Assembly (NCBI GenBank): GCA_002269645.1
Contig: NIVC01002641.1
Span: forward strand, 1 to 64,000
Source of the DNA: Macrostomum lignano
Taxonomy: Eukaryota
Length of the DNA: 64,000 bases
Reading direction: 5' to 3'
The stretch's first letter is position 1, and each line of letters starts with the position of its first letter. The notes beneath the pieces are model-generated. The model was not told where the DNA came from and searched no databases. It saw nothing but the letters and a program-made list of their open reading frames with translations. Below are positions 25,061 through 52,440 of this stretch, piece by piece. A program made the position numbers and the translations under genes.

Positions 25061-27112
25061 GTAAACACTAATTAATTTCAATTAACAAACTGATTAAATA
25101 AAAGTCATGTGATCATATAGAACCAACCAATCTTTATTTACAAATTATGTATTAATAAACACTACAATAAAAATAATAACATAACAATTTACACTTAAAA
25201 TACACTGCTACAAATAGTATACTGCTATAAAAAGTAACTAGACTATGGCAAGTGCCTGGTATGTCCTAATGTACTACTGTTCATTAGCACAATAGTAGTA
25301 TTGTAGAATATCCTTTGTTTAATTATTAAAGCAAGCTAAGCTTGTTACCCAAATTGTATTAAATAGAATTTAATAACAATTTAACAATTTAATGGCATGT
25401 ATTAAATGCAGAAATCAACTGGAGAAATCAAATGCCTTTGTAGGCGAACCATGAATTTTTTGTTAGCAACAGATATATTTTTTTGGCCTTTCGGCTCGGT
25501 GAGTGTTTTTTGTCAATAATGATTTCAAATAAGAAACTAATGCTCTCAAAATTAACTTCTAAATGTTTTTTGTTTTGCATTTATATATGTTTGTGTCTAT
25601 TTGGTTTATGCTATAATCCTATATCTACGCAATATATTAATTTGTGTAGGCTAGCATTATTTGGCATACAAACAAACAAATTATTTTTTTGTACAAACTG
25701 CAAAAAACCATCCTAACTGAAGTTAATCATCTACTACTATTGTTGCTAATGTATTACCCCCAGTGTTTTTTCTTAAAAGTGTTTTTATATTTCTAGGAGT
25801 TTTACTTGTAAATTAGTTCAAAATATAATACTTTATAATGCAAAATATACACAAACTTTGCTAATATAAATATGAGCCAATTTTAGGGAAAGAAGACCAA
25901 CTTTGAACCTTGTAACTTGCTAAATTGTTAACTTATATTAAAGTTTGCTAAATTCATTCTAAGACTTACAAGTGTTGCTTATTTGCAGTAAAGAATCTAA
26001 AAAGGAGTTAAAAGAAATTTGCTAAGAGAAGGATTGTGAGCTTATACAAAGCCATATTCTAATATTGATTTTCTAATCCAAGTAATGCCTAGATTCTGAA
26101 TAATACATGTATTAGTAAAACCATTCAGGCCTACAAGATTTATATTAAGATAATAAGATACTACCACAATTATCCTACAAAAGCTTGGTATTAGGCCCCT
26201 AGGCCCTACTATTAGCAAAAAGATCAAATTAAAAAAAGAAGCAAAATGCATGTTGCAACTTGATGGCTTTATAATAGGATAGAGGTATAGGCATTATAAC
26301 AACTTCGGTTTAAACTGTTAGATTAAAAAAGGCAGCTCTAGCTATGACAACTTTGGTGGCAGCTATGGAATAATTTTAAAGGCAGTTGTTATTATTACGG
26401 TGACCGTATTTATAAATAGCAAGACGGTTATTTTTATGGTTAACACCTTAAAACAAATACCATCTAAATGAAGTGACGAACTTGCTGTGCAAATACTATG
26501 ATGGTTAAATTTAAAAAAATAAGAAATGTTTTATTAATAAATACCATGGTAACTTCTAGTGGTTCTTGTCATAGTAGCTCACTTTAGGTAATTGTTAGGG
26601 CCTACTATTACCTTGTAATTTAACAGAAATTTCTTCCACATGACCATAAAAATAGCCATTTTGCTTCCTACCTACGGTAACCGTAAAAATAACAGTTTTT
26701 CTATTGTGACAGGGCTAATAGAAAGTTGTCGTTATTACGTGAAGTTATTAATTACGAATATTTATTACTAACAGTTCACTGACTCAAAGGGTGTTACTAA
26801 CGTGCGCTATTAATTCACTGAAAGCTCTTGCACATGCGAAAACGATTAGGTTAACGTATTTTGTGCCAGGAGGCCCACCAGTTGTTTTAATGCACTCATT
26901 CTGCAAGTATATAAATACCGTGCGCACCATTTCGAATCGGGCTCGTTTGTTTTTGCCGTTGGCCCTTTGCTCTGGCCTGAGTTGCAACTTAGCCCGGACT
27001 GTGTGCTCCCGATAGTTATTGACTTGTAAGATCGGCCCAGTTTGCCTGTTAATCTAATAGTTCATGGCTAGTTATTAGTAAATGTCAAGTCTTGGTTGAG
27101 CGCTGCTCCTAA

Positions 27113-27419
27113 CCCGCATAGCAAAATTACGTATCCAATAGAAAGTGGGACGTCTCCGATACGCAACTTTTTTGGTTGCAGGAACGTCCTTGATACGTAT
27201 CCAATTTTTATGATCCTCTAAAGAAGTTCGTTTCTACAAAAATGGTGAACAGATACTGCTTGTAATTTTATTGATTACTTATTCCACCATTTTGTAGCTT
27301 CTTGTAGCTTCTTTAGAGGATCATAAAAATTGGATACGTATCAAGGACGTTCCTGCAACCAAAAAAGTTGCGTATCGGAGACGTCACTTTCTATTGGATA
27401 CGTAATTTTGCTATGCGGG
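27113..27419. mobile_element. MITE with ~113-bp near-perfect TIRs and TAA target-site duplication (PIF/Harbinger/Tourist-like)
   Basis: Left arm 27113-27226 equals the reverse complement of the right arm 27308-27419 apart from one 2-nt indel; TAA flanks both ends. Confidence 0.85.
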
Positions 27420-28284
27420 TAAGTACTTATAGTTAGCTTAGCAAACTAAATCTTAGCTCTAACATACTGTGTTAGTAAGGACACAGGAGGCCGAGCTTAT
27501 ATTTGTGTTTTATTAATTATTATTGTTAAGTTTGATTATTATTGTTTGCTGTTGCGTTAGTTTCCAACTTGCTAACTTATCGTTTAATAATTATTATTAC
27601 AATTGCCAAGTTCATTAAGTTCTATTTATCCAGCTTGAGTGTTAGCTCTAATATTCAAATCTTCTTTGATAGCGGTTTTTGTCTCAGTCAATTTAATCAT
27701 AGCTTCGATTGGTGGCAGCGACCTACCTTTCGTGACAATAATAGTTTTGGGATTGAAACTGAATATCGATACATTGGGGAACGTAATTTATCAAGAAATT
27801 AGTGGCATTACTCTATCAGACCATCTCAGGGTACCGCTCTTCGGCTGATGCAAGATAAGCAGTATTGCCTTAGGCCACATATCTGAAAGCTACCATAAGT
27901 TAGGAGTATTCGAGAACTCTTGTCGCTCGGGAATAGAGGGAATAATCACTCTGCTCACTAAGAGTTCGATACCAAGAGACCCATCTGGACTAGGTCAGAC
28001 GCTGAGTCATAGTAGTCTTAAAGTGCCAGTGAGTCAGAGTCTACCGGAGAACAAAGACGCTAGTAACCAAGAGGCCCATAGGAGAAGTTCTATTTCCGCA
28101 ACCAAGAGGCCCATATGAAATTATAGGTCACTCGCGCCAAGAGGCCCGTCTGAGTTCCTCGCTAGGTTTTTATGTTCGCTGTAGACTACTAGCCAGCAGT
28201 AGCCAGTTTAGCGTCGATAGTCAGTTCGCAGCTAAATTCATAATTAACATCGTGAAGTCGCTAGAAGTTCGAATCTTTTACAAT

Positions 28285-30070
28285 TGGTGTTCCAACGTTG
28301 GGAGTAGTAAAGCACATTTACTAACGACGTCGTAAAACCGGCGATTTAGACACCTTTTACACTATTTATACGGTTACATTAAGTAAAGACCATAGGCCCG
28401 CATAGTGTCTTATGCGTTAACCGTAAAAATTGGGCCTAACAGTTTTGTTATTTATACGATCACTGTAACAATAACAACTGCCAATTTATTATTAAGCTGC
28501 AATCTAATGGACTCAAAAACATTCAAGGCCATCGGAGGCACGGCAGACGACCTTCGCGAGTCAAAGCAGTGGGTCTTCCCGTTCGGCTTCAGTGAACCTC
28601 TCACCACTCTTGGCAAAGCCACCCTCCGGACCGCCGTTCAGCCCCAGCTTTAGCTACATCATCGTCAAGAAGGAGACGGCCGCACGATGATCGTGCGCCG
28701 CGAAACCAGCGAGGAGCTAGGAATCCTACGCATCGGACCAAGCAACCCCAGCGTCTGTCATCTGAGAGAAAGACTCTGGTGAGCTCCAGGAGCCACTCAG
28801 CGCTGCATTGGCGGCCACAGCGACGGAGGCAGACGATCAGGCAATGCCGCAGCACAAGCACCTCAGCAAACATAATCAAGACCAGGGGACTACTTAAACT
28901 TAAAGTCGTAGTCCCCGATCAAGACCTTCAGGCAGCGATTTTGGTAATTTCGTGCGTCAATGACGCTGAAGTCGGCATCCACCTGCAAGACGGAGCCGTG
29001 CCGGTGTGCCATCGCTAAGTCGTATCCCCGTGTATCTGCGGGAGGCTGCGCAGCGTGAGCTCGACGATCAACTGCAAGCTGAAATAATCGAGAAAGTGAC
29101 CGGCCGGACCGTCCGAATGGGTGGCACGAATAGTTGTTGTCCCGAAGTCGCAGCCTGGCCAAGTGCGCATTACCCAAGATCTGCGAGATGTGAACAAGTT
29201 CGTAGTGCCCGAGAAACAGCCCATACCAACTTTTGAAGACGTCACTGACGAAATGGCCGGTGCGCGCTACATGTACTTCCCCGAGTTGGACATCAACAAG
29301 GCGTTCCACCGGATCCGAAGGGTATCATGAGACTGACGCGCCTGTGCATGGGCTTTACGTCAGCGTCTGAGATTCTACGAGTCATGACCAGCGTGCTCGG
29401 CGGGCTTCGAGGAGTCCGCTGGGTACATTACGACATTATCATCTATGCAAGCTCCATCATTGAGCACAACCAGCGGCTAGCGGCAACATTGCAAAGGCTA
29501 GAAGAGCACAACATCAGCTTAAATCCTACAAAGTGCAAGTTCGCCGTCAAGGAGGCCAAGTTTCTCGCTATGCGCCTGTCCGAGAAGGGCATCCAGCCGA
29601 CAGACGAGAAGGTGAGCGCTGTGAAAGCTTTCCGAGCACCGAAAACGCGTCCGAAGTGAGGTCCTTTCTCGGCCTTGTGGCTTTTGTCAGTCGCTTTATC
29701 TCAGCTCTTTCAGACATGGCCAAGCCTCTGCGAGACCTGACCAGAAAGGATGCGCCGTGGTCCTGGGGAGCGGCTGAGGAGACTGCTTTCAGCGCCATCA
29801 AGAACTCGATGTCCGCGAGCAGCTCACTTGCATTCTTTGACAAGCGCAGACGCACAGAAGTGATCGTGGATGCCAGCCCAACGGGACTCGGAGCGATCCT
29901 GAGCCAACAGCAGCCAGAGACCGATCGCCTACGCAAGCCGCGCACTGTGAGCGGTGGAGACGCGCTATTCTCAGACGGAAAGAGAAGCCCTCGCCGTCAA
30001 ATTCGGCTGCTGCGCTTCCGCCACTACCTCAGTGGTTCGTCTGGTTTCCGGGTCGTCACTGACCACTAGC
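28285..30070 (+). mobile_element. Degraded Ty3/gypsy LTR retrotransposon (PBS-like start, protease remnant, RT, RNase H), truncated before integrase
   Basis: CA-AT-TGGTG at 28281-28289; ARIVVVPK...VRITQDLRDVNK, YDIIIY (decayed YxDD), KCKFAVKE, EVRSFLGLVAF, VIVDASPTGLGAILSQ, YSQTEREALAV, FRVVTDH. Confidence 0.85.
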
Positions 30071-30074
30071 CTTT

Positions 30075-30890
30075 TCAGGACGACGCCCGGTCGAGTGGTG
30101 CCGACGGCTCGCCATCCGGGTATTCGTAGACCACCTTGCACGAATTTCGGGAGAAAGCTTAGCTGGTGCAAACATTAAATGTGACTACAAAGGCTTGGAC
30201 TCTGATTTTAGGGTTTGACTCAGACTTTACGCTTTTGTAAGGTTTACGCTATGGCGTAAGTACATGTACAAGCTAGATATTGCAGTTCAGCCTTTTCAAT
30301 CAATCTTCCATTGCTCCATGGTAGAGTCAATGATAATATCATAAGCGGCACAACCCTGTGGTGAGCCAGCGGCATCAATGGAATGGGCAGAATAACCTCA
30401 GCTCTGGTTGTGGAATATCGCAGAAGGCGCTGCGCCAGCTAGGGTGGCGCCCCACATCGTCTGGAGTTCATTATAGTTTGCAGGGAACCCTCACGTGCCT
30501 GCCACAAATCAAGGCGACAGTCGACCCGCAGCCAGCTAAGAGTCTACAGCAGCTGTAACTACATGTATCACGTCGTCAAGCAGTGTACACGCTTTGTGAC
30601 GTAAAGGTCGGCCCGCATTAGGCTTGTATCCCAAGGATCACAAATACGTCTGCATGTCCTTTAGTGCCAAAGTTGAATGCGCGTTACCACTGAGATACCA
30701 AAGCGGTATCCGGGGCCTGTGCTGATATTCTGAGGTGGGAACACGGCGAGATCAAACCTGCGCTGAGCCTCCACCCAGCTCCAGCACCGGCACGGTCTCA
30801 AAGTTCGTGTTGGCCTCGTCCAGTTTGCCCAGCATGTAGTTCACCAACAGCCAGGCGAATTTGGCCTCCTCCAGTCCGAAGAAGCTCCGT
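30075..30890 (-). pseudogene. Third, fragmentary copy of the NTPDase gene (end of exon 1, part of intron, start of exon 2) with unrelated DNA inside
   Basis: 30078-30165 matches 33146-33235; about 30190-30280 matches the intron; 30750-30885 matches 33490-33615 (AKFAWL..NYMLGKLDEANTNFETVPVLEL). Confidence 0.85.
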
Positions 30891-32432
30891 AGACTGCGGC
30901 CTGCGGCTGCTCTCCTCCGAGTTGCACCAGATGAAGATGCAGCTAGCCGTCAGTCTTTGCTGATCTGACCACGCTCACGGGGCGGCCTGCAAAGAGCTGG
31001 TCAATAAGTGCGGCGTTGATGGTGCGCCAGGCACTGTCGAGCTCATCGGCAGTGAGGTCTTGCTCCTCCCCGAAGACGATGACCGCCGGTTGGAGCTTGG
31101 CTTTTGAGGCACGGCCGCGCTGATGGCAGGTTTGCTGGGTGGCAAACCAGCGGGGGTTGTTTCCTGAGGGGCAGGGGTCGCTGTGGTTCCTTTCGGCCCG
31201 ACAGCAGCCTCGCCCTCCCGAGGTCCCACTTCCGCAGGTGGCCGGCCCGCAGCCTGTCTGTCGCGTTGTCGCTGTTGCCTCACGTTGCGAGGACGTCAGG
31301 CCTTCGTCGTCGAGCTCAACTGCCCCAACTGCCAGAGTTTCCGGGGTCCCGGATTATTTGCGGCGGTAGAAGCCACGGCTGAAAGCGGGAAAAGATGAGC
31401 AGAGTCACAGAAGAAAAATTAAAAAAATGAAACCACTAGCGGCCGGTTCAGCTACACGACCTTCAAGCCACCTTAGACATTTCAGAGCAGCAATTATCAG
31501 TGCCAGGTCCCGCAGTCTAGCTGCGTACCCTGTTACGGTCTAAGGATAACATCTTTGCCTCAGCGCCCTAGCCAGAGACATCTGATAACGCACAGGTACG
31601 CGCACCGGGATAGCCTTAGCAACTAAGGCCAAAGCTCCGGAAAGGTGACCGGCGCCGTTATTCAGTCCGTCCATGTGGCCCTAGGGTCCATGCACTTTGA
31701 ACACTCGCGGGACGTGTATACCCCTGGGGCGGCTATTAGAGCAGCATCCAGCCATAAATGCTTTAAAAGAGGTGGAGCATTTTTGAAATATCGCAGACTG
31801 TAGGCTTAGTCCGTCTCATATATATTTCACAGGCATTGTTCTGGAGCTGTCTATGCTTGTAATTTTGTGTATGGGGTTTGCAATAGCCACATGTACGTTA
31901 AATTAGCTAGCATATTTATTTTGCTCCTACGTACATTCACCAATTATTAATCGGACCAATTTCACTCTTTACTGATCGCCCACCCCATATTACACTCACT
32001 CGTGTATTGTACGCTTTCATCTTGTAGCTACTATATTGACTGTATGGGTGATGCACTTTTTCTGACACCCATAAGCAGCGCCAGCCGTCGGGAACATCCG
32101 TCGACATCACTGACGTCGGTTGTTGCACGGGTTACAGCTACCTGTACTACCATCTACTATATGCTCAATCATGCAACTAGGCAACTTTGCATACGGCGCT
32201 GTTTACGATGACAGTGCAGTGCAGCTTTCTGCTGCTGCAACATGTTGAAAATCGTTTATTTCTTGGACTCGAGAAAGCAAGGTAGAGTAAAAAAAGCGCA
32301 TGCATCGGAACTAATTTAATTTAGGGGGCAAATAGCCACGACCAGAAAATAAATTGGTAAGCAGTGAAACTTCCTTATCTACTCGCCAGCATCCGCAACA
32401 GCACCTCAAGCCACAGTTTCTGCTGTTGCAGT

Positions 32433-34169
32433 CTACGAGATCGACTTGGCCGCCGACGCTGCAGCCGACTGCAGCAGAGCGTCCAGACTGAAGCCGAGCG
32501 TCCAGCCCAGGTTGTCGCTGCCGCCAAGAGCTGTCACGGTGCCGCTGTCCGGCAGACCCATCTGCTCCAGCATGGCGCTCAGCACAGACAGGTTAATGCA
32601 GTAGTAAGGCGTGTAGGGTCCTTGGTCAGGAGGGTTGCGACAGACGGCAGCCGCGTTGTCGGCAATGTCGCCAGCGCTAATTGAGTAGGCCTTGCAGTCG
32701 CCTCTTGGCTCGCTTGGACAAACGGAGTCGCTGTAGGTCACTCTCGTACCCGGCACTGGGCTCGACTTTTTCAAGTACTTCACCAGGTAGTAAATGGACG
32801 ATATGGCGTAGACGGTTTTCTCACCTTTGGCGATTCCTGGTTCCGTTCTGACCTTCACCTGTTGGACCAAATCCTTTGCTTGGGCGAAGCATTTCTTCAC
32901 AGTTGCGGCTGTCGAACCGCTGGAGTTGTCGCGCTGGTTACCTTCGAGTTGAAGCGTCACGGAGCCGAAGCTGAAATTCAGCGACGCATTGGCAGCAATG
33001 CAGCTGCTGTTGTAGGCTTTCTTAGAAACTCCAGTCCCGGCCGACTTCCCGTTTCTGTAGCCAACAAAGCGTAAGACGGATTCACGAACTCCCAATCCTA
33101 AGTAGCTCCGAGCTCGGATTCGACGACCAGTCAGCGTCGCTTTTAAGGACGACGCCCGGTCGAGTGGTGCCGACAGCTCGCCATCCGGGTATTCGTAGGC
33201 CACCTGTGCACGAATTTCGGGAGAAAGCTTAGCTGCATGGTGAAACACTTAACGTTGATTGAATTTGACTAAAAAGGCTTGGATTTTTAGTCATTTAAAT
33301 AAAAATGAAAGTTAGCTTGACTCTGATATCAGGGTTTGACTCAGAATTTACGCTTTTGTAAGGTTGACGATATAGCGTAAGTACATGTAGATATTGATCA
33401 GCAATTTCCATCTATCTTCCACTGCTGTGTTGCCATGGTAGTATTGGTTACAAAAAACTTCGAGTCAGCGATAGCATCATCACAGGCGAGAACAAACCTG
33501 CGCTGAGCCTCCGCCCAGCTCCAGCACCGGCACGGTCTCAAAGTTCGTGTTGGCCTCGTCCAGCTTGCCCAGCATGTAGTTCACCGACAGCCAGGCGAAT
33601 TTGGCCTCCTCCGGTCCGCTCAGCAACTTCGCCGAGTCGATGTCGGGCGCGAGAAAGGCCGCGCTGGTGGCGAGGGTGTCCCTGACTACTCTGAGAATTC
33701 GACGCCTCGACCCGGAGTCCAACAGGCGCAGTCCGGCTGTGGCGCGCAGCGCTACGCAGGTGACGGCGCGTTGCGGCTTCGGCACATCAGCCGCCGCAGC
33801 AGCCAGCAGGGCGTTCACCTGATCGCGGCTTCTGTCTGGAAAGTGTTGAAACGCTGACAGGCCGGGCTTGCGGCTGTACCGGCGAAGTCTGAGGTGCCGC
33901 AGCTTCAGCGGTCCGTTGGGCGACTTTGGCGTTCGCTCGACAAAGAACTCGTGCAGTGCAGCTCGAGTTTCCGTGGATCCGGCGTCCAGCACAAGAAATC
34001 TGAGCGTGTCGTTCTTGTCGACCGCTCGATGGCAGCCGGAATTGGTCAAATCCGTCGATTTCTTCCCGGTTTTAGCGTTTTGAGACTGGCTGCTGCCCAC
34101 GTGCAGACATTGAAGCAGAGGCAGCAGCCACAATATCTGTACCAACGAGTGCAGCCGATGCAGGTTCAT
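32433..34169 (-). CDS. GDA1/CD39 family NTPDase (apyrase, ENTPD5/6-like), copy A; signal peptide, no C-terminal anchor; exons 34169-33498 and 33203-32433
   Basis: ACR1 LDAGSTETR, ACR2 ATAGLRLL, ACR3 SGPEEAKFAW, ACR4 ELGGGSAQ|VAY across a phase-0 GT-AG intron, ACR5 LGWTLG; hydrophobic N-terminus LVQILWLLPLLQCL. Confidence 0.9.
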
Positions 34170-37100
34170 TTGTTCGAAGTTCTTTGGCGTGTAGCTCCTC
34201 TGATTTGTCAGCTCTCAGCTCGGTATATTGATTGTTAACCTACAGATATGACGGTTCACACTAAATTCCTAGGCTCCTTCTTTTCCAGTGGAACGATAGT
34301 CTATGGCCAAACCTCACTAAAAAACGAAGCCTGAGAACTCAAAACGAGGCCTGTTAACCGGTTAACAGGCCTAAGAACAAGGCCGGAGAACATTTTAGAA
34401 CGACTATAATCCTCGGACTGCTATGCAAGCTTTAAAAGCTTTATTTTTTCTTATTTGAATGGTGTATAGTGAATTCGTCTGTTGACACTTTAGGTTGGTG
34501 CTGAAAGGATTGACTTGGGTTGGGGAAGAATTGTTGAGATGTCAATGCTTTCGAAGGGAAGTGCTGAGATGTCAAGGCCCCCCGTAGCCTCAGAATTTCT
34601 GAGATTGCAAGGTTTGGGGGGAATAAGATGTAAAGGCTGAGTTCAGAAGCTAAATGTCGTTTATTTAAAAAAAATTTTTATTACATTCTTTGTTTGGCTC
34701 CCCAACGGGGGTTGTAGATTGCTAGTAAACTTCATACGAGTCTAATTTTAAAAAAGCAATGCAAAAAACAAAACATTTCAAATCTTTTCAGCGATCAGGG
34801 ACTAATTTTATGAAGCACTAATTGACTATCAGATATCTGGGTTGTTAGCGATAGAGGCTTTTTGTGTGATTGATGTGAGTTCCAATTTTACGAAGCTTCT
34901 CTCATTGATTATAGTTAAGCATTGCTAAAAGCTAGCAACTTTAAGACCACCCTCGATCGACTGGATAAAAACAATTGAAAAAGTCATGGACCTTCTGCAA
35001 TTATGGAGCGTCAACGAAGAACCTGTTAACCCTGAAGAGAGAATCTTATAGTGTTTAGTTCTTATGCGGTTTAGGTCGTTGAATAAAGTACCTTTCCGCT
35101 CGCTTCTAAGCCCGAAGATTAGAGTATAATGCAAGAATGATTTTTCGGTCGTAGGACCAGTGATAATTTAAAGGAGATATGACGAACTTTTTGAGTTATT
35201 AATGAAAAAATACACAAAATTCACGTGAGTCTTCATATCAGATTAGATAAAGAGAAGTTGATTATAGCACTCTCTCTATAGCTGGTGGCTCACCTCAAAT
35301 GTGGACTGACTCAGGCTGACTCGAACAAGCTTATCAGATTCAGGTGCTCTCTTTGACATGCATGCATGCTATTTTTGTCAACTCTTTCCAGAGGCCTTTT
35401 TCGACCCTTTAAACACACAGCTATCGCGCGACCACAGCCAACAAGGTTTCAGCTGCAGAGGATTCGCATTGCAGAGTAAAAACAGTACAAAAATAAACAT
35501 GCGAAATAAGCTGAAGTGCGCATCAAAGTATACCGACTATAAAATGCGTAGAATTACTTAGAGATCTTTTATTTACACGTATATAAATGACTCCGTCAAA
35601 TATAGGCTCAACCACAGAGTATAATGCTCTAGTGACTTGATAATTGACCGATAAAGTCATATTTCTACAAAACTCTGTGGTTTGACACGGCACTTTTGGC
35701 AAGTTCAGCGACAACTGAAAGCAGATAAACAAACTGCAGATGACGCCAAAGGCTGCTCCGAAGTCGTCTTGCTCCTATAGAGTACAGCGGCCGCATCAGC
35801 CGCACTCGCTGCTACTCCTGCTGCTGCTGATGCCGCTGCTACCGCGTCTGCGGGCGCAAAACGCAGCCATTTCTGATGGTCTGGAAAGTGTTCGAGACCT
35901 CGAAGCCATCGAGAACCCGATAGATCTGTACCATTCCGGCTGCCATCGAGCGGTCGACAAGAACGACACGCTCAGATTTCTTGTGCTGGACGCCGGATCC
36001 ACGGGAACTCGAGCTGCACTGCACGAGTTCTTTGTCGAGCGAACGCCAAAGTCGCCCAACGGACCGCTGAAGCTGCGGCACCTCAGACTTCGCCGGTACA
36101 GCCGCAAGCCCGGCCTGTCAGCGTTTCAACACTTTCCAGACAGAAGCCGCGATCAGGTGAACGCCCTGCTGGCTGCTGCGGCGGCTGATGTGCCGAAGCC
36201 GCAACGCGCCGTCACCTGCGTAGCGCTGCGCGCCACAGCCGGTCTGCGCCTGTTGGACTCCGGGTCGAGGCGTCGAATCTCAGAGTAGTCAGGGACACCC
36301 TCGCCACCAGTGCGGCCTTTCTCGCGCCCGACATCGACTCGGCGAAGTTGTTGAGCGGACCGGAGGAGGCCAAATTCGCCTGGCTGTCGGTGAACTACAT
36401 GCTGGGCAAGCTGGACGAGGCCAACACGAACTTTGAGACCGTGCCGGTGCTGGAGCTGGGCGGAGGCTCAGCGCAGGTTTGTTCTCGCCTGTGATGATGC
36501 TATCGCTGACTCGAAGTTTTTTGTAACAAATACTACCATGGCAACACAGCAGTGGAAGATAGATGGAAATTGCTGATCAATATCTACATGTACTCGTAAA
36601 CCTTAAAAAAGGGTAAAATCTAAGTCAAACCCTGATATCAGAGTCAAGCTAACTTTCATTTTTATTTAAATGACTAAAAATCCAAGCCTTTTTAGTCAAA
36701 TTCAATCAACGTTAAGTGTTTCACCATGCAGCTAAGCTTTCTCCCGAAATTCGTGCACAGGTGGCCTACGAATACCCGGATGGCGAGCTGTCGGCACCAC
36801 TCGACCGGGCGTCGTCCTCAAAAGCGACGCTGACTGGTCGTCGAATCCGAGCTCGGAGCTACTTGGGATTGGGAGTTCGTGAATCCGTCTTACGCTTTGT
36901 TGGCTACAGAAACGGGAAGTCGGCCGGGACTGGAGTTTCTAAGAAAGCCTACAACAGCAGCTGCATTGCCGCCAATGCGTCGCTGAATTTCAGCTTCGGC
37001 TCCGTGACGCTTCAACTCGAAGGTAACCAGCGCGACAACTCCAGCGGTTCGACAGCCGCAACTGTGAAGAAATGCTTCGCCCAAGCAAAGGATTTGGTCC

Positions 37101-37517
37101 AACAGGTGAAGGTCAGAACGGAGCCAGGAATCGCCAAAGGTGAGAAAACCGTCTACGCCATATCGTCCATTTACTACCTGGTGAAGTACTTGAAAAAGTC
37201 GAGCCCAGTGCCGGGTACGAGAGTGACCTACAGCGACTCCGTTTGTCCAAGCGAGCCAAGAGGCGACTGCAAGGCCTACTCAATTAGCGCTGGCGACATT
37301 GCCGACAACGCGGCTGCCGTCTGTCGCAACCCTCCTGACCAAGGACCCTACACGCCTTACTACTGCATTAACCTGTCTGTGCTGAGCGCCATGCTGGAGC
37401 AGATGGGTCTGCCGGACAGCGGCACCGTGACAGCTCTTGGCGGCAGCGACAACCTGGGCTGGACGCTCGGCTTCAGTCTGGACGCTCTGCTGCAGTCGGC
37501 TGCGGCGTCGGCGGCCA
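32447..37517. repeat. Large inverted duplication: arms 32447-34042 and 35933-37517 around a ~1.9-kb unique spacer
   Basis: Arms nearly identical by eye, including the intron (294 vs 284 nt). Confidence 0.93.
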
Positions 37518-37603
37518 CATTGACGGCAACAGCGACTGCCGCTGCTGTCTCTATGGCAACGGTGCTCTCGATGTTGGTGCCCGCACGGATTGCGCAGCTG
37601 TAG
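35740..37603 (+). CDS. GDA1/CD39 family NTPDase, copy B; signal peptide and hydrophobic C-terminal tail; 1-nt deletion near 36278; exons 35740-36476 and 36761-37603
   Basis: Same ACR motifs with canonical LDAGSTGTR; CGAATCTCAGAG versus CGAATTCTCAGAG in copy A shifts the frame and gives TAG. Confidence 0.85.
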
Positions 37604-38964: not shown

Positions 38965-39445
38965 CGCCAAAATGAGTGATAGTGGCCCAAAATGAGTGAT
39001 AGTGGTGCCAAAATGAGTGATAGTGGTGCCAAAATGAGTGATAGTGGCCCAAAATGAGTGATAGTGGCCCAAAATGAGTGATAGTGGCCCAAAATGAGTG
39101 ATAGTGGCCCAAAATGAGTGATAGTGGTGCCAAAATGAGTGATAGTGGTGCCAAAATGAGTGATAGTGGTGCCAAAATGAGTGATAGTGGTGCCAAAATG
39201 AGTGATAGTGGTGCCAAAATGAGTGATAGTGGCCCAAAATGAGTGATAGTGGCCCAAAATGAGTGATAGTGGCCCAAAATGAGTGATAGTGGCCCAAAAT
39301 GAGTGATAGTGGTGCCAAAATGAGTGATAGTGGTGCCAAAATGAGTGATAGTGGTGCCAAAATGAGTGATAGTGGTGCCAAAATGAGTGATAGTGGTGCC
39401 AAAATGAGTGATAGTGGCCCAAAATGAGTGATAGTGGTGCCAAAA
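38965..39445. repeat. 20-21-bp minisatellite (CCAAAATGAGTGATAGTGGTG / ...GGC)
   Basis: Tandem units of two variants. Confidence 0.96.
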
Positions 39446-40079
39446 AGAGTTAAAACGGCGCCAAAATGAAGATCTGGTCTGAATTGGCAAAATCAATACA
39501 ATACCATGCAGTAGCACTTATTGGCAAAATAGAATATACAATTTTTTTTGCTCTATTTTCACGCATTGTCTTCCCCCAAGATGAGACCCACAGCAACGCC
39601 TCAGCCTCCAGCCCAGACATTTGTTAGCTGCATCGGATAAAATTCAGACAATCGCGAAAAAAACGGACGACAAAATGCGAAAGCTGGCTTGACCTTTGTG
39701 AGCCTAGAGCTTTTGACAACAGTAATGTTAATCACATGCTCTCTCGTTTGCTCAGGTTGGAAGAGCTGAGAGCAGTAAGACCTCATATGGGAGTTGTTGT
39801 ACATGTACTCACCAATGTACGGGCAGTCCACAGCTGAGTTGGGTTAAGAAAGGAAAGGATTCAGATTATATGCCAGACTATAGCGCACATTCAAGCAAGA
39901 GAATGAGGGGAGAAGAGAGGAAACTACACAGGGGGAGATAGGGGAGGAGAGAGGCTGTATATACTTTACTTAACGACTGACTGACGTGTTTCATTTATTA
40001 CAAGCGCTCAGAACCGCCAGATCAGGTGTTAGTGACAGAGTTAGATTCGTAAAGCAGAAATTAATACTTCCTGCAGACA

Positions 40080-41279
40080 ATGCCAGTTATGCCCAGAATG
40101 AAGCGTCTAACACCGCTAGCTATCCTGGCTATCATATTCATGGCAATCTACTTACTACTGTCACCGACAACGCCCAGCGTTATACTCAGATACATTCAAG
40201 ACAGAGAGTTGAACATCAGGCTTCCATTGCTGCCAGATGTTGACAATCTTGAAGAATGCGCCGCACTCAACGAGCTTCGCAACGTGAACTTCGCAGATTC
40301 CAGACTGCAGCACCGGCTGTGCGAAGACTCGACAGCCTACAAGCTTGTTAATGGTAGATACCCATTGTGCCAGCTGAATAGGAACCTGCCAACTCAGTTC
40401 TACAGAATAGTCAGAAAGGGCTCCAGATTGGCCAGCATGATGCGCGTGACTGGCGCCGGTTTCATACCAATTTACACCTTCGACAATGACGATTTGATTT
40501 CCAAAGTGTTGCTAAACCAACAGGCCTGGGAGCCGGCGCAGATCTGGACGATGCTGAAGCTGTTGAAGAAATTCGATCCGGGCTCGGTGACATTCCTTGA
40601 CATCGGCAGCAGCCTGGGCGCGTACAGTCTACAAGTCAGAGCCGAAGGCATCCCAGTAGTGGCTGTCGACGCAAATATTCGCGCTTTAATCCGGCTGCAG
40701 TTATCGGCTAAGGAGCTCGGAGTCCTTGACGACAATTTGAAACTGTTCTGGTGCTTCATCAACGACAAAGTCGCTCTGAAACGGATCAGCTGGAGCGCAG
40801 ACAACATCAGTTGCAACGCTGGCAGCGCATCGAGCGGATTATCTGGCTGGAGACAGCAGGTGAGCAAGATCATCCACGACACAATTCCCGTAATGACAGT
40901 TCGAGCTGACGAGCTCCGAGAGCACATCCATACTAAAAAAGTTATCGTGAAGATGGACATCGAGTCCGGGGAATACGTGTTCATGAAGACCGGGCGGACA
41001 CTGTTTGAACAATTCGACATCCTGGCGCTGCAGATGGAGTTCTGGCGCGGCTCGGGCGAGCCGCCGCACTCTTCACTCTACTACAAATCGGTGACGAGTT
41101 TCATGACGGCAAGGAACTACTCGCTGATATCCGCTATAGACTATCGAGTCCAGGATTTATCCACTTTTACCGAATGGGACGGCATCTGGGTTAAAAATGA
41201 CTTTTTGCACGAGGTTGTTGCACTGAACCGCGGAGAAATGGATAATATCAATGTTGCTAAACCAGCCGACAGCCTGTAA
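40080..41279 (+). CDS. Type II membrane FkbM-family (Methyltransf_21-like) SAM-dependent methyltransferase, intronless, 399 aa
   Basis: N-terminal TM LAILAIIFMAIYLLL; motif I VTFLDIGSSLGAYSL; VVAVDAN; VIVKMDIESGE and ILALQMEF typical of FkbM C-terminal strands. Confidence 0.8.
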   Translation: MPVMPRMKRLTPLAILAIIFMAIYLLLSPTTPSVILRYIQDRELNIRLPLLPDVDNLEECAALNELRNVNFADSRLQHRLCEDSTAYKLVNGRYPLCQLNRNLPTQFYRIVRKGSRLASMMRVTGAGFIPIYTFDNDDLISKVLLNQQAWEPAQIWTMLKLLKKFDPGSVTFLDIGSSLGAYSLQVRAEGIPVVAVDANIRALIRLQLSAKELGVLDDNLKLFWCFINDKVALKRISWSADNISCNAGSASSGLSGWRQQVSKIIHDTIPVMTVRADELREHIHTKKVIVKMDIESGEYVFMKTGRTLFEQFDILALQMEFWRGSGEPPHSSLYYKSVTSFMTARNYSLISAIDYRVQDLSTFTEWDGIWVKNDFLHEVVALNRGEMDNINVAKPADSL

Positions 41280-41664
41280 CTGTAAGACCCGTAGCTGTCT
41301 GAGAAAGCATTCAAACCTCAAAAGCCTTCAAAAAATTCCGAGAAAGTGTCCTTAATTTTAAGTACACTGGTCCTTGGCACACGCATGCACTTATCAAGAC
41401 ATTCTTTTTGCTTCATTGATGGACATCTACTTGCACGAGTATCACGTAACACATACATGCAACAGTAACTGTATATCAAGTTAAAATCAAATTTAATGTT
41501 CAAATATACGACATGGAAACCTAATCTAAATGCTGACAAACGAGAGTTGTTGCATAATTGCATAAGTTGTTGCCTTTTTTACAAATCAATGTAAACGTAT
41601 CTCCCTTTAAGAAGACAAATAACTAGCTACCGTGCACTGTTGTTAAATCGAGGGTCCTACAGCA

Positions 41665-43102
41665 TTGGGTGCTGTTCAATCTATGGCTCTAAAGTGTAGG
41701 GTGTTGTTTAATCCAAGGTCCAACAGCATGGGGTGCTGTTCAATCCAGGGTCCAACAGCATGGGGGCATGGGGTACTGTTCAATCCTGGGTCCAACAGCA
41801 TGGGGGCATGGGGTGCTGTTCAATCCAGGTTCTAAAGTGTAGGTTGCTGTTCAATCCGGGGTCCAACAGCATGGGGTGCTGTTCAATCCCGGGTTCGACA
41901 GCATGGGGTGCTGTTCAATCTAGGGTCCAACAGCAGGCTGCTGTTCAATCCAGGGTCCAACAGCATGGCTGCTGTTCAATCCAGGGTCCAACAGCATGGC
42001 TGCTGTTCAATCCAGGGTCTTACAGCATGGCTGCTGTTCAATCCAGGGTCCAACAGCATGGCTGCTGTTCAATCCAGGGTCCTACAGCATGGCTGCTGTT
42101 CAATCCAGGGTCCTTCAGCATGGGGTGCTGTTCAATCCATAGTCCTACAGTGTGGGGTGCTGTTCAATCCAGGGTCCAACAGCATGGGGTGCTGTTCAAT
42201 CCATAGTCCTACAGTGTGGGGTGCTGTTCAATCCAGGGTCCAACAGCATGGGGTGCTGTTCAATCCATAGTCCTACAGTGTAGGTTGCTGTTCAATCCGG
42301 GGTCCAACAGCATGGGGTGCTGTTCAATCCCGGGTCCAGCAGCATGGGGTGCTGTTCAATCTAGGGTCCAACAGCAGGCTGCTGTTCAATCCAGGGTCCA
42401 ACAGCATGGCTGCTGTTCAATCCAGGGTCCAACAGCATGGCTGCTGTTCAATCCAGGGTCTTACAGCATGGCTGCTGTTCAATCCAGGGTCCAACAGCAT
42501 GGCTGCTGTTCAATCCAGGGTCCTACAGCATGGCTGCTGTTCAATCCAGGGTCCTTCAGCATGGGGTGCTGTTCAATCCATAGTCCTACAGTGTGGGGTG
42601 CTGTTCAATCCAGGGTCCTTCAGCATGGGGTGCTGTTCAATCCATAGTCCTACAGTGTGGGTGCTGTTCAATCCCGGATCTTAAAGTATGGGGTGCTGTT
42701 CAATCCCGAATCTTACAGTGTGGGGTGCTGTTCAATCCCGGATCTTACAGTGTGGGGTGCTGTTCAATCCCGGATCTTACAGTGTGGGGTGCTGTTCAAT
42801 CCCGGATCTTACAGTGTGGGGTGCTGTTCAATCCCGGATCTTACAGTGTGGGGTGCTGTTCAATCCCGGATCTTACAGTGTGGGGTGCTGTTCAATCCCG
42901 GATCTTAAAGTATGGGGTGCTGTTCAATCCCGGATCTTACAGTGTGGGGTGCTGTTCAATCCCGGATCTTACAGTGTGGGGTGCTGTTCAATCCCGGATC
43001 TTACAGTGTGGGGTGCTGTTCAATCCCGGATCTTAAAGTATGGGGTGCTGTTCAATCCCGGATCTTACAGTGTGGGGTGCTGTTCAATCCCGGATCTTAC
43101 AG
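41665..43102. repeat. 31-33-bp minisatellite (GCTGTTCAATCCAGGGTCCAACAGCATG grading into GTGCTGTTCAATCCCGGATCTTACAGTGTGGG)
   Basis: About 45 units; the left half contains a larger duplicated block and the right half is homogenised. Confidence 0.96.
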
Positions 43103-43844
43103 CGTACGTGATTGTGGGTTCCTGCTTAAACTTAAGGATCGAAGTTTATGAAAAAAAACTAGAGCCAAAAAGGCAATAAATTTTATCCAGAAATCACAAG
43201 ATAGGCACAAAGCACTCAAATCTTTGACAGTTTGCCAAAAGAAAACGAAAAAATGTATTTAACCCGGTTAACATAATCATCCACAGTAGGCAAAATGATT
43301 TTCAGTGGCGTAACGCATATTTTGTTGCTTTTAACAATGAATCATAATCAGGATTAGACATAATAACTATATTCAATACACCATAACAGATGAAAATTCA
43401 CTACGGGCACTCGGCATTACTATGTATTACCATCATTATTCAAACAGCCAAAATGCGTAGAAGCGACGAGGAACAGAAGCAAAAAAATGCATTTGGGTGT
43501 TTTGGTTGCCCCGGTTATATATGATTCTAAATTTGGAGAATTCCATTGAAAGGAATAAAAAATTAATATCCGCTGGAGAATAGCAGAGTGTAGAAGGAAA
43601 TCCTCTGCGGTGAATTAGATGAGATAAAGGGCGATTCTCTGCAGGGAATTAGACGGGGTAGAAGGCGATTCTCTGCAGGATATTAGACTTGTTACGCGAA
43701 TTTTGGCGTGGAATTAAAAGAAGCAGATTTTTCTGATTTATTAAAGAATAACTGATCCCTTTTTGATTCTCAGCACAAAAGAAATTCTGACGACATAAAG
43801 AGATAATCTGAGACTCACACGGATCAATCAGTAATACCCGGTAG

Positions 43845-46315: not shown

Positions 46316-52440
<6,125 letters not shown>

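What the first reader, a model, noticed from the sequence alone, without database searches (positions are those of the whole stretch)
32433..37603. Inverted NTPDase pair: identical catalytic core, different ends (secreted versus anchored)
Seen: identity spans only 32447-34042 and 35933-37517 and begins and ends inside the coding sequence, including the intron. Outside it the two genes have unrelated-looking signal peptides; copy B ends in a small-residue and hydrophobic tail (AASAATLTATATAAAVSMATVLSMLVPARIAQL) while copy A stops early (AASAAKSIS*). Faint similarity just outside the arm (DLTNSGCH versus DLYHSGCH) suggests older paralogs. Inference: ongoing intrachromosomal gene conversion between palindrome arms homogenises the enzyme while preserving two localisations, soluble and possibly GPI-anchored, forming a paired extracellular nucleotide-hydrolysis system.
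Basis: partly seen in the sequence, partly recalled or inferred. Interest (0 to 1): 0.7.

Follow-up and report, generated by a model that had tools for sequence, protein, structure and literature searches.

The report
Inverted flatworm NTPDase pair, gene-converted core
Two head-to-head nucleotide-hydrolysing enzyme genes of the flatworm Macrostomum lignano keep their 1.6-kb catalytic core almost identical by copying between the two copies, while their different ends stay distinct: a clear but ordinary case of concerted evolution.

Summary
Window 32447-34042 and 35933-37517 are inverted arms, 99.05% identical (15 SNPs, 2 indels), intron included. Each lies inside a GDA1/CD39 NTPDase gene of Macrostomum lignano (contig NIVC01002641.1; annotated Mlig014487.g1 and Mlig003413.g1).

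Gene conversion is supported by comparison with two sister loci.
- Against homeolog L001, the core has 13 sites that group by locus and 0 that group by gene type. The flanks have 0 and 264.
- Near-identical contig L004 carries a 0.9-1.5 kb tract of copy-A alleles in the B position.

- Copy B has a 1-nt frameshift in this assembly. It is probably an assembly error, because an intact identical protein exists from another assembly.
- Copy A carries G67E at a phosphate-loop glycine kept in 121 of 123 relatives.
- A third relic fragment lies at 30071-30878.
- In L004 the palindrome centre is deleted.

The 3' boundary is simply where homology ends. B's hydrophobic tail is shared with distant paralogs, so A is probably the derived tail-less form. 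GPI attachment, secretion and an extracellular role are untested, and the nearest relatives are ER/Golgi-type ENTPD5/6. Verdict: a new member of a known kind, of modest interest.

The parts
32433..34169 (-). Copy A gene (annotated Mlig014487.g1, 480 aa, tail-less; ends ...AASAAKSIS*). Exon 1 is 34169-33498, the intron 33497-33204 (GT..AG) and exon 2 33203-32433.
   Evidence: The conceptual translation equals P0123 exactly. Pfam GDA1_CD39 E=5e-37 over aa 59-475. AF2 model pLDDT 82, with top PDB fold hits all NTPDases.
35740..37603 (+). Copy B gene (annotated Mlig003413.g1, deposited only as a 258-aa 'partial' product). Exon 1 is 35740-36476, the intron 36477-36760 and exon 2 36761-37603. It ends in the hydrophobic tail ...TLTATATAAAVSMATVLSMLVPARIAQL*.
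   Evidence: Three reading-frame pieces (150+66+280 aa) match P0124, a 496-aa protein from another assembly, exactly and contiguously.
32447..34042 (-). Arm A of the homogenised core: codons 43-476 plus the intron.
   Evidence: There are 0 'by gene type' informative sites inside it and 264 outside.
35933..37517 (+). Arm B of the homogenised core.
34043..35932 (.). Unique centre of the palindrome. It holds the two diverged 5' coding ends (A 34043-34169, B 35740-35932) and a 1570-nt intergenic spacer that presumably carries divergent promoters.
   Evidence: The spacer has no internal repeat and is partly conserved in homeolog L001. The 5' coding ends keep residual similarity, z=7.7.
36278..36279 (+). 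Site of the 1-nt deletion (TT to T) private to copy B of this contig. It shifts the frame and gives a stop at 36286-36288.
   Evidence: A, A', B' and the L004 core all have the T.
33969..33971 (-). Codon 67 of copy A: GAA (Glu) where the other three copies have GGA (Gly). It lies in ACR1, reading DAGSTETR.
   Evidence: Gly occurs in 121 of 123 homologs that carry the motif; Glu occurs only in P0123 and P0125, which are this copy in two assemblies.
37518..37603 (+). B-specific 3' coding end: a 28-aa Thr/Ala-rich then hydrophobic tail.
   Evidence: KD(9) maximum 2.2. It is conserved in B' with one change, T to K. Similar hydrophobic C-termini occur in paralogs P0002, P0003 and P0127.
32433..32446 (-). 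A-specific 3' coding end (KSIS plus stop). Homology to B stops here.
   Evidence: The 3' flank is not similar to B's (z=1.1). No tail remnant lies within 6.4 kb downstream.
33342..33379 (-). Intron block (a 10-nt indel plus 4 SNPs) with the crossed pattern A=B' and B=A'. Its counterpart in B is 36594-36622.
   Evidence: Relic C carries the 10-nt form.
30071..30878 (-). Relic C, a third and partial NTPDase copy. It covers the last ~120 nt of exon 1, the intron (with a ~330-nt insert and a 37-nt deletion) and the first ~65 nt of exon 2. It is 92-96% identical to A and abuts a truncated LTR-retroelement pol fragment.
   Evidence: It is present in L004 but not in the compared part of L001.

Best explanation
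What it is. This is an old head-to-head pair of paralogous GDA1/CD39 (NTPDase5/6-like) genes in Macrostomum lignano. The 1.6-kb segment that encodes the whole folded catalytic domain, intron included, is kept nearly identical by repeated, non-reciprocal gene conversion between the two inverted arms on the same chromosome.

Where conversion stops. At the 3' end it stops because homology ends: copy A lacks any counterpart of B's tail. At the 5' end it stops because the signal-peptide region has already diverged by about 42%, too far to take part in the pairing.

What results. Two proteins share one enzyme body. The B type carries a C-terminal hydrophobic tail, also present in distant paralogs and therefore probably ancestral, that should tether it to a membrane. 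The A type is a derived, tail-less and presumably soluble form.

Wider context. The pair predates the recent genome multiplication of this species and is present at three sister loci. Their fates differ. In L001 both genes are intact. In this window copy A has G67E and copy B has a possible frameshift. In L004 the palindrome centre is deleted.

Shown versus inferred. Shown: the anatomy, family membership, concerted evolution, the recent conversion tract and the conservation of the distinct ends between loci. Inferred: localisation (secretory entry, soluble versus anchored), substrate, and whether selection or merely the limits of homology sets the boundaries.
For: Family and organism.
- Pfam GDA1_CD39 E=5e-37 over aa 59-475.
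- ACR1-4 align to plant apyrase structures, and the GWxLG of ACR5 is invariant.
- The AF2 model has pLDDT 82, with top fold hits 5u7p, 3cj9 and 3zx3 at probability 1.0.
- The best hit is a Macrostomum lignano protein at 96% identity. The window is NIVC01002641.1 with the same coordinates.

Concerted evolution against homeolog L001, which has the same head-to-head arrangement and is collinear.
- Inside the core: 13 sites with A=B differing from A'=B', 0 sites with A=A' differing from B=B', and 6 crossed sites.
- Outside the core: 0 and 264. Fisher p=1.5e-22. About 0.05 such sites are expected from parallel mutation.
- Core divergence is 0.95% for A-B, 1.96% for A'-B' and 1.9-2.5% between loci. 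The between-locus figure matches the published subgenome divergence of 1.9-2.4% (PMC10733133).

Recent tract.
- Contig L004 is almost identical to the window in its flanks.
- Its B-position core has copy A's state at 15 consecutive diagnostic sites, including 5 A-derived alleles, and B's state at the two outermost sites. It differs from A at 2 positions and from B at 24.
- 13 of the 14 window-versus-L004 SNPs on that side lie in 36243-37123 (P=5.6e-7 for at least 13 of 14 falling in the core).
- The remnant of the A arm in L004 still has the A allele at 32841, so the transfer was non-reciprocal.

Old paralogy at the 5' end: z=7.7.

Core equals folded domain: helix 3-25, disordered 29-44, fold 55-479.

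Distinct ends are kept at both intact loci (P0001/P0122 versus P0123/P0124).

Gene models are RNA-seq based (PMC5730564).
Against: - No sequencing reads could be examined. Polishing a consensus with reads cross-mapped between 99%-identical arms could create or erase arm differences, which matters most for L004's A-like core.
- In the 3' half of the core there are no locus-grouping sites, so post-split conversion is shown only for exon 1 and the intron (L001 comparison) and for the L004 tract.
- The arms of L001 differ by about 2%, as much as the loci differ from each other, so conversion is episodic rather than frequent.
- The crossed-pattern sites are not explained by simple one-way conversion.
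- Localisation is unsupported by any predictor or experiment.
- Private changes are 7 nonsynonymous to 10 synonymous in A-type copies against 0 to 7 in B-type copies (Fisher p=0.065). With G67E, this hints that the tail-less copy may be decaying rather than serving as a maintained partner.
Confidence: 0.8

Rival explanations
1. Decay rather than partnership. After the genome multiplication the pair is redundant, and at this locus it is degenerating. Copy A carries a damaging phosphate-loop change and copy B a frameshift. Gene conversion is a neutral by-product of inverted homology and 'preserves' nothing. This rival concerns function. It is compatible with the conversion mechanism.
For: G67E sits at a position that is Gly in 121 of 123 relatives. 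Copy B has a private 1-nt deletion. In L004 both genes are truncated by central deletions. A-type copies have 7 nonsynonymous to 10 synonymous private changes, against 0 to 7 in B-type copies.
Against: Both genes are intact at L001. An intact protein identical to this window's copy B exists from another assembly (P0124), so the frameshift may be an assembly error. The position equivalent to G67 is, from my own knowledge, His or Arg in NTPDase1-3, so Glu need not abolish activity. The N:S contrast is not significant (p=0.065).
Confidence: 0.3
2. Same pair, different cell biology. Both are ER/Golgi-lumenal UDP/GDP-hydrolysing enzymes of the ENTPD5/6 type, serving glycosylation rather than extracellular purine signalling. 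On this reading B's tail is a single-pass membrane helix with a short cytosolic PARIAQL end, not a GPI signal.
For: The best non-Macrostomum hits are ENTPD5/6 at 27-30% identity. A roughly 18-residue Thr/Ala/Val/Leu stretch followed by P-A-R-I-A-Q-L fits a borderline type I anchor with a positive residue on the cytosolic side (sequence; hydropathy maximum 2.2).
Against: The strongly hydrophobic run is only about 13-14 residues. The small-residue stretch (SAAASAA), the ~8-residue spacer and the tail running almost to the C-terminus also fit a GPI signal. No substrate or localisation data exist.
Confidence: 0.4
3. A single recent partial inverted duplication of the 1.6-kb core, with no later conversion. 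On this reading the high identity only reflects the young age of the duplicate.
For: The boundaries are sharp and shared by both intact loci. The 3' flank shows no homology at all.
Against: The 5' coding DNA beyond the core is still recognisably homologous but 42% diverged, so the duplication is old. Thirteen locus-grouping sites against an expected 0.05 require exchange after the loci split. The L004 tract points the same way.
Confidence: 0.07
4. Assembly artefact: a chimeric palindrome, or arms made alike by consensus polishing in a highly redundant PacBio assembly.
For: The Mlig_3_7 assembly is known to be redundant, with many chimeric scaffolds and misrepresented paralog copies (PMC10733133). 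The frameshift in B is of a kind typical of long-read errors.
Against: Three separate contigs carry the structure. An independent assembly yields both A-type and B-type proteins with the same private variants (P0124, P0125). The arms have unique, different ends and a unique spacer. The L004 junctions show microhomology and a 14-nt templated-looking filler, which are repair signatures.
Confidence: 0.05

Closest known systems
Vertebrate ENTPD5 / ENTPD6 (NTPDase5/6)
   Same: These are the closest relatives outside Macrostomum by sequence, at 27-30% identity over 80-90% of the protein. They share the GDA1/CD39 fold, the DAGSTGTR form of ACR1 and a single N-terminal hydrophobic segment. Copy A likewise has no C-terminal anchor.
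   Different: They have no C-terminal hydrophobic tail like copy B's. They are not arranged as inverted pairs and are not homogenised. Their roles as ER/Golgi UDP/GDPases (my own knowledge) have not been shown for the flatworm proteins.
Arm-to-arm gene conversion in palindromes and inverted gene pairs (human Y-chromosome palindromes; the Drosophila Hsp70Aa/Ab inverted pair). Cited from my own knowledge, not tested here.
   Same: Inverted repeats around a unique spacer are kept about 99% identical by intrachromosomal, non-reciprocal exchange. The boundaries are sharp, and the centre is prone to deletion.
   Different: The scale differs: 1.6-kb arms against tens of kb to Mb. Here the arms cover only the catalytic-domain part of each gene, so two different proteins share one converted body. 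The evidence comes from homeologous copies in a neopolyploid rather than from species comparisons.
NTPDase pairs with different locations in parasites: Leishmania major Golgi NTPDase1 and secreted NTPDase2 (PMC4270689, seen); Schistosoma mansoni tegumental SmATPDase1 (PMC3873443) and secreted SmATPDase2 (my own knowledge)
   Same: One organism deploys a membrane-bound and a soluble or secreted NTPDase.
   Different: Those pairs are distant paralogs with their own catalytic domains. They are not adjacent, not inverted and not homogenised. Their anchors are transmembrane segments.
Toxoplasma gondii NTPase I / II (NTPDase1/3), near-identical duplicated genes (my own knowledge; the structure 4a5a appears among the fold hits)
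   Same: Two almost identical NTPDase genes in which a handful of residues may alter function.
   Different: By my recollection they are tandem, not inverted. Both are soluble dense-granule proteins, with no divergent targeting ends. They are very distant in sequence (12-13% identity in the fold alignment).

Membership tests
GDA1/CD39 nucleoside phosphatase (NTPDase) family | Match to the Pfam PF01150 profile above its curated cut-off, over most of the domain | tested here: met
   128 bits against a cut-off of 24.9, E=5.1e-37, residues 59-475 on profile positions 12-411 of 423.
GDA1/CD39 nucleoside phosphatase (NTPDase) family | Five apyrase conserved regions (ACR1-5) with their key residues | tested here: met
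   ACR1 is DAGST(E/G)TR, ACR2 ATAGLRLL, ACR3 GPEEAKFAWLSVNY, ACR4 LELGGGSAQV and ACR5 LGWTLG. There are two deviations. Copy A has Glu for the near-invariant Gly67. ACR4 has Glu where most relatives have Asp (D217 is 'nearly invariant').
GDA1/CD39 nucleoside phosphatase (NTPDase) family | Two-lobed NTPDase fold | tested here: met
   AF2 pLDDT 82.2, pTM 0.83. All top Foldseek PDB hits are NTPDases (5u7p E=3.8e-27, rat NTPDase2, CD39, Legionella NTPDase1) at probability 1.0.
GDA1/CD39 nucleoside phosphatase (NTPDase) family | Divalent-cation-dependent hydrolysis of nucleoside tri- or diphosphates | not testable with these tools
   This needs a biochemical assay.
NTPDase5/6 subfamily | Groups with ENTPD5/6 rather than with the cell-surface NTPDase1/2/3/8 or with NTPDase4/7 | tested here: inconclusive
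   The best outside hits are all named ENTPD5/6, and the ACR1 form DAGSTGTR is shared. Identity is only 27-30%, and no phylogeny was built.
GPI-anchored protein (copy B) | Cleavable N-terminal signal peptide | tested here: inconclusive
   Hydropathy only. B has SLLLLLLLMPLLP (KD9 maximum 3.1) after a 22-residue basic N-region. A has LVQILWLLPLLQCL (KD9 maximum 2.1), which is a helix in the model. No signal-peptide predictor was available.
GPI-anchored protein (copy B) | C-terminal signal: a small-residue attachment site, a short polar spacer and a hydrophobic end | tested here: inconclusive
   The layout SAAASAA / TLTATATA / AAVSMATVLSMLV-PARIAQL fits by eye, with KD9 maximum 2.2. It fits a weak single-pass membrane helix equally well. 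No GPI predictor was available.
GPI-anchored protein (copy B) | Release from the membrane by PI-specific phospholipase C, or a lipid-anchor mass | not testable with these tools
   This needs an experiment.
Concerted evolution by gene conversion between inverted repeats | Inverted arms of high identity around a unique spacer | tested here: met
   The arms are 99.05% identical over 1.6 kb, separated by 1.9 kb of unique sequence.
Concerted evolution by gene conversion between inverted repeats | Within the tract, copies group by locus; in the flanks, they group by gene type | tested here: met
   13 L to 0 P sites inside, against 0 L to 264 P outside, Fisher p=1.5e-22.
Concerted evolution by gene conversion between inverted repeats | Non-reciprocal transfer of derived alleles in a contiguous tract | tested here: met
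   The B-position core of L004 carries 15 consecutive A-type states, including 5 A-derived alleles. The A remnant keeps its A allele at 32841. Caveat: consensus sequences only, no reads.
Concerted evolution by gene conversion between inverted repeats | The structure is real in the genome and not an assembly product | tested here: inconclusive
   Three contigs and an independent assembly's proteins agree. Reads were not available.

The most novel reading that the evidence does not exclude
The pair is a selected 'one enzyme, two addresses' module. Domain-limited gene conversion lets a membrane-tethered and a soluble NTPDase co-evolve as a single catalytic unit. The tethered form would possibly be GPI-anchored, which would be unusual for this family. 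The tail-less copy, freed from constraint (7 nonsynonymous private changes against 0, plus G67E in the phosphate loop), may be moving towards a new or non-catalytic nucleotide-binding role. The palindrome's own instability, seen as the central deletion in L004, would then set the turnover of the module among the three subgenomes.
Probability: 0.15. Interest if true: 0.5.

Novelty: new member of a known kind. Interest (0 to 1): 0.33.

Why it matters
It is a compact, well-bounded example of concerted evolution limited to a protein domain. The converted tract coincides with the folded catalytic domain, and the targeting ends stay distinct. Three sister loci in a neopolyploid animal capture three stages: intact, mutated and centre-deleted. 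This could serve as a small test case for how inverted repeats behave after genome doubling in Macrostomum lignano, an organism in which transgenesis is possible. For NTPDase biology, a C-terminally tethered NTPDase5/6-like enzyme would be unusual, but that remains unproven. Nothing here challenges current understanding.

Tried and rejected
- Search for a remnant of B's tail or 3' DNA downstream of copy A, by sensitive blastn and by tblastn with the tail peptide: nothing above noise. The idea that A's short end is a diverged tail was dropped. The 12-nt match GACTGCAACAGC/GACGGCAACAGC is not significant (z=1.1).
- Relic C as further evidence of conversion. The two window-versus-L004 SNPs in C (30773, 30873) are interleaved with C-specific states kept in both contigs (30824, 30846). 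This is not a simple tract and may be two point mutations, so the claim was dropped. It also weakens C as an outgroup for polarising the locus-grouping sites.
- Reciprocal crossover or inversion as the origin of L004's A-like core. Rejected because the A remnant in L004 keeps the A allele at 32841.
- Whether the inverted-pair layout is general in the family. The 36-40%-identical paralog P0002 is a single intronless gene with no partner within 10 kb.
- Cross-species orthologs. An exhaustive search of 1.84 billion representatives found nothing closer than 40% identity outside M. lignano.
- Contigs for P0124 and P0126, from the other assembly: not on record.
- Literature. No paper mentions Mlig014487 or Mlig003413, and none links Macrostomum with NTPDases or with gene conversion at this locus.
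- Repetitive origin of the flanks. The flanks and the spacer are single-copy in the sequences held.

Full report
**1. What is there**

The window is the first 64 kb of contig NIVC01002641.1 of the Macrostomum lignano Mlig_3_7 assembly, with identical coordinates. Two genes lie head to head.

- Copy A is on the minus strand at 34169-32433: exon 1 34169-33498, intron 33497-33204, exon 2 33203-32433. Its translation equals the deposited 480-aa protein P0123, Mlig014487.g1.
- Copy B is on the plus strand at 35740-37603: exon 1 35740-36476, intron 36477-36760, exon 2 36761-37603. It is deposited only as a 258-aa 'partial' product, Mlig003413.g1.

Both are GDA1/CD39 NTPDases.
- Pfam PF01150 matches with E=5e-37 over residues 59-475.
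- ACR1-4 align to plant apyrase structures, and ACR5 is present.
- An AlphaFold model (pLDDT 82, pTM 0.83) has NTPDase structures as all of its top PDB matches.
- Outside Macrostomum the best hits are vertebrate ENTPD5/6 at 27-30% identity.
- An exhaustive search found nothing closer than 40%.

**2. The observation**

Near-identity runs from A 34042 to 32447 and from B 35933 to 37517.

- Inside that stretch there are 15 substitutions in 1585 bases (0.95%) and two indels.
- Just outside, divergence jumps to 42% in the 5' coding DNA and 60% in the 3' DNA.
- The tract covers codons 43-476 and the whole intron.
- In the model, residues 3-25 form a helix (the presumed signal peptide), 29-44 are disordered, and the fold spans 55-479. 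The homogenised tract is therefore essentially the folded domain.

The quoted end peptides are correct.

**3.

1. Copy B lacks one T after 36278, which ends its frame at 36286-36288. All other copies have that T. P0124, a 496-aa protein derived from a different assembly, matches this window's copy B exactly and contiguously on both sides of the gap. The frameshift is therefore probably an assembly error, or else a very recent mutation.
2. Copy A has Glu instead of Gly at residue 67 in the ACR1 phosphate loop (DAGSTETR). Gly occurs in 121 of 123 relatives with the motif. Glu occurs only in this copy, seen in two assemblies.
3. A third, partial copy (relic C, 30071-30878, minus orientation) covers the exon 1 end, the intron and the exon 2 start. 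It is 92-96% identical to A and abuts a truncated LTR-retroelement pol fragment.

**4. Test of gene conversion, first line of evidence**

A second locus, L001 (NIVC01000551.1), is collinear with the window. It carries the same head-to-head pair with both genes intact: A' is P0001 (491 aa) and B' is P0122 (523 aa). I aligned A, B, A' and B' and classified each variable site.

| Region | Sites grouping by gene type (A=A', B=B') | Sites grouping by locus (A=B, A'=B') | Crossed sites (A=B', B=A') |
|---|---|---|---|
| Outside the core | 264 | 0 | 0 |
| Inside the core | 0 | 13 | 6 |

- Fisher p=1.5e-22.
- Parallel mutation would give about 0.05 locus-grouping sites.
- Five of the 13 change the protein in both arms of a locus: S/R99, K/E131, N/I209 and F/S210.
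- The 13 sites lie in exon 1 and the intron. The 3' half shows none.
- Core divergence between loci (1.9-2.5%) matches the published divergence of the three subgenomes of this neopolyploid, 1.9-2.4% (PMC10733133). The pair therefore predates the genome multiplication, and exchange between the arms has happened since.

**5. Second line of evidence**

A third contig, L004 (NIVC01004925.1), is almost identical to the window in its flanks but has lost the palindrome centre.

- Window 34826-35960 and 32875-34521 are absent, leaving an island at 34522-34825.
- One junction has 1-2 nt of microhomology. The other has a 14-nt filler that repeats adjacent sequence. Both are repair signatures.
- What remains is the B core without its 5' end, B's tail, and the last 428 nt of A's core.
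- That B-position core has A's state at 15 consecutive diagnostic sites (A coordinates 33732 to 32841), including five alleles derived in A. It has B's state only at the two outermost sites. It differs from A at 2 positions and from B at 24.
- Thirteen of the 14 SNPs between the window and L004 on that side fall in 36243-37123, and one falls in the other ~4.5 kb. P=5.6e-7 for at least 13 of 14 falling in the core.
- The A remnant in L004 still has the A allele at 32841, so the transfer was one-way.

This looks like a very recent conversion tract of 0.9-1.5 kb, perhaps part of the same repair episode as the deletions. That last link is an inference. The caveat throughout is that I had consensus sequences only. 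Cross-mapped reads during polishing could mimic such a tract.

**6. The boundaries**

The 5' unique coding DNA keeps significant residual similarity (z=7.7, 0 of 500 shuffles). The upstream DNA and the 3' flank do not (z=0.1 and 1.1). No trace of B's tail DNA lies within 6.4 kb downstream of A.

So the 5' boundary lies within old, diverged homology, while the 3' boundary is simply the end of homology. Hydrophobic C-termini also occur in the distant paralogs P0002 and P0003 and in P0127. B's tail is therefore probably the ancestral state and A a derived, tail-less copy.

**7. Function**

Both N-termini have a hydrophobic stretch, and A's is helical in the model. B's tail fits a GPI signal: a small-residue stretch, a spacer of about 8 residues and a hydrophobic end. 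It fits a borderline single-pass helix followed by PARIAQL about equally well. No predictor was available, so 'membrane-tethered versus soluble' is an inference and 'GPI' is open.

An extracellular role is not supported by anything here. From my own knowledge, the nearest relatives are ER/Golgi lumenal enzymes.

Private changes in the core are 7 nonsynonymous to 10 synonymous in the A-type copies and 0 to 7 in the B-type copies (p=0.065). Together with G67E, this hints that the tail-less copy is less constrained.

The gene models are RNA-seq based (PMC5730564). Reads multi-map among the sister loci, so expression from this particular locus is unknown.

**8. Unexplained**

Six SNPs and a 10-nt intron indel show A=B' and B=A'. 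One-way conversion does not produce this pattern. It needs a reciprocal swap between arms or an exchange between sister loci in opposite register.

**9. Verdict**

The gene-conversion inference is supported by two independent comparisons. The functional story (soluble plus GPI, extracellular pair) remains conjecture. At this locus the 'identical core' carries a suspicious active-site change in one copy and a frameshift, possibly artefactual, in the other. Conversion between inverted duplicates is well known. No paper mentions these genes. This is a new member of a known kind, of modest interest.

Noticed in passing
L004 (NIVC01004925.1) 9424-9742; corresponds to window 32875-35960: In a sister contig the centre of the palindrome is deleted in two pieces, leaving a 304-nt island. 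One junction carries a 14-nt filler that repeats adjacent sequence. Both genes are truncated there, and only a 60-aa fragment is annotated.
   Followed up: yes
window 33342-33379 and 36594-36622 (also 33663/36311 and 33099/36865): A crossed pattern between loci: a 10-nt indel plus 6 SNPs where A matches B' of the other locus and B matches A'. This implies a reciprocal swap between arms, or an exchange between sister loci. It is not explained by one-way conversion.
   Followed up: partly
window 28900-30070: A frameshifted, truncated LTR-retroelement pol fragment (RVT_1 and RT_RNaseH_2 hits). It ends exactly where NTPDase relic C begins. The stretch 26197-31468 is about 2.4 kb longer than its counterpart in homeolog L001.
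   Followed up: partly
window 48652-52224 (+): An uninterrupted 1190-aa ORF of a non-LTR retrotransposon (endonuclease, reverse transcriptase and RNase H domains). It may be an active element.
   Followed up: no
window 40080-41279 (+): A 399-aa ORF with a weak FkbM-type methyltransferase (Methyltransf_21) match, 24.6 bits against a cut-off of 22.7. No gene is called at the corresponding position in the tables for L001 or L002. This is an unusual domain for an animal genome.
   Followed up: no
whole window, e.g. 38966-39469, 41641-43103, 15966-17013, 7967-9080: The window is dense with minisatellites: 42 tandem-repeat rows, with periods of 11-64 nt and up to 95 copies. The 21-nt array at 38966-39469 and the 32/64-nt array at 41641-43103 are shared with the sister loci but differ in copy number.
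   Followed up: no
window 30773 and 30873 (relic C): These are the only two SNPs between the window and L004 within about 8 kb on the A side, and both lie in relic C. Both are G in L004 (as in A and B) and A in the window. C-specific states between them are unchanged, so this is not a simple conversion tract.
   Followed up: yes
L001 537-953, L004 1033-1449; window about 44.6-46 kb: A Trm112p-family gene is the conserved neighbour on the B side at all three loci, which confirms that the loci correspond to one another.
   Followed up: partly
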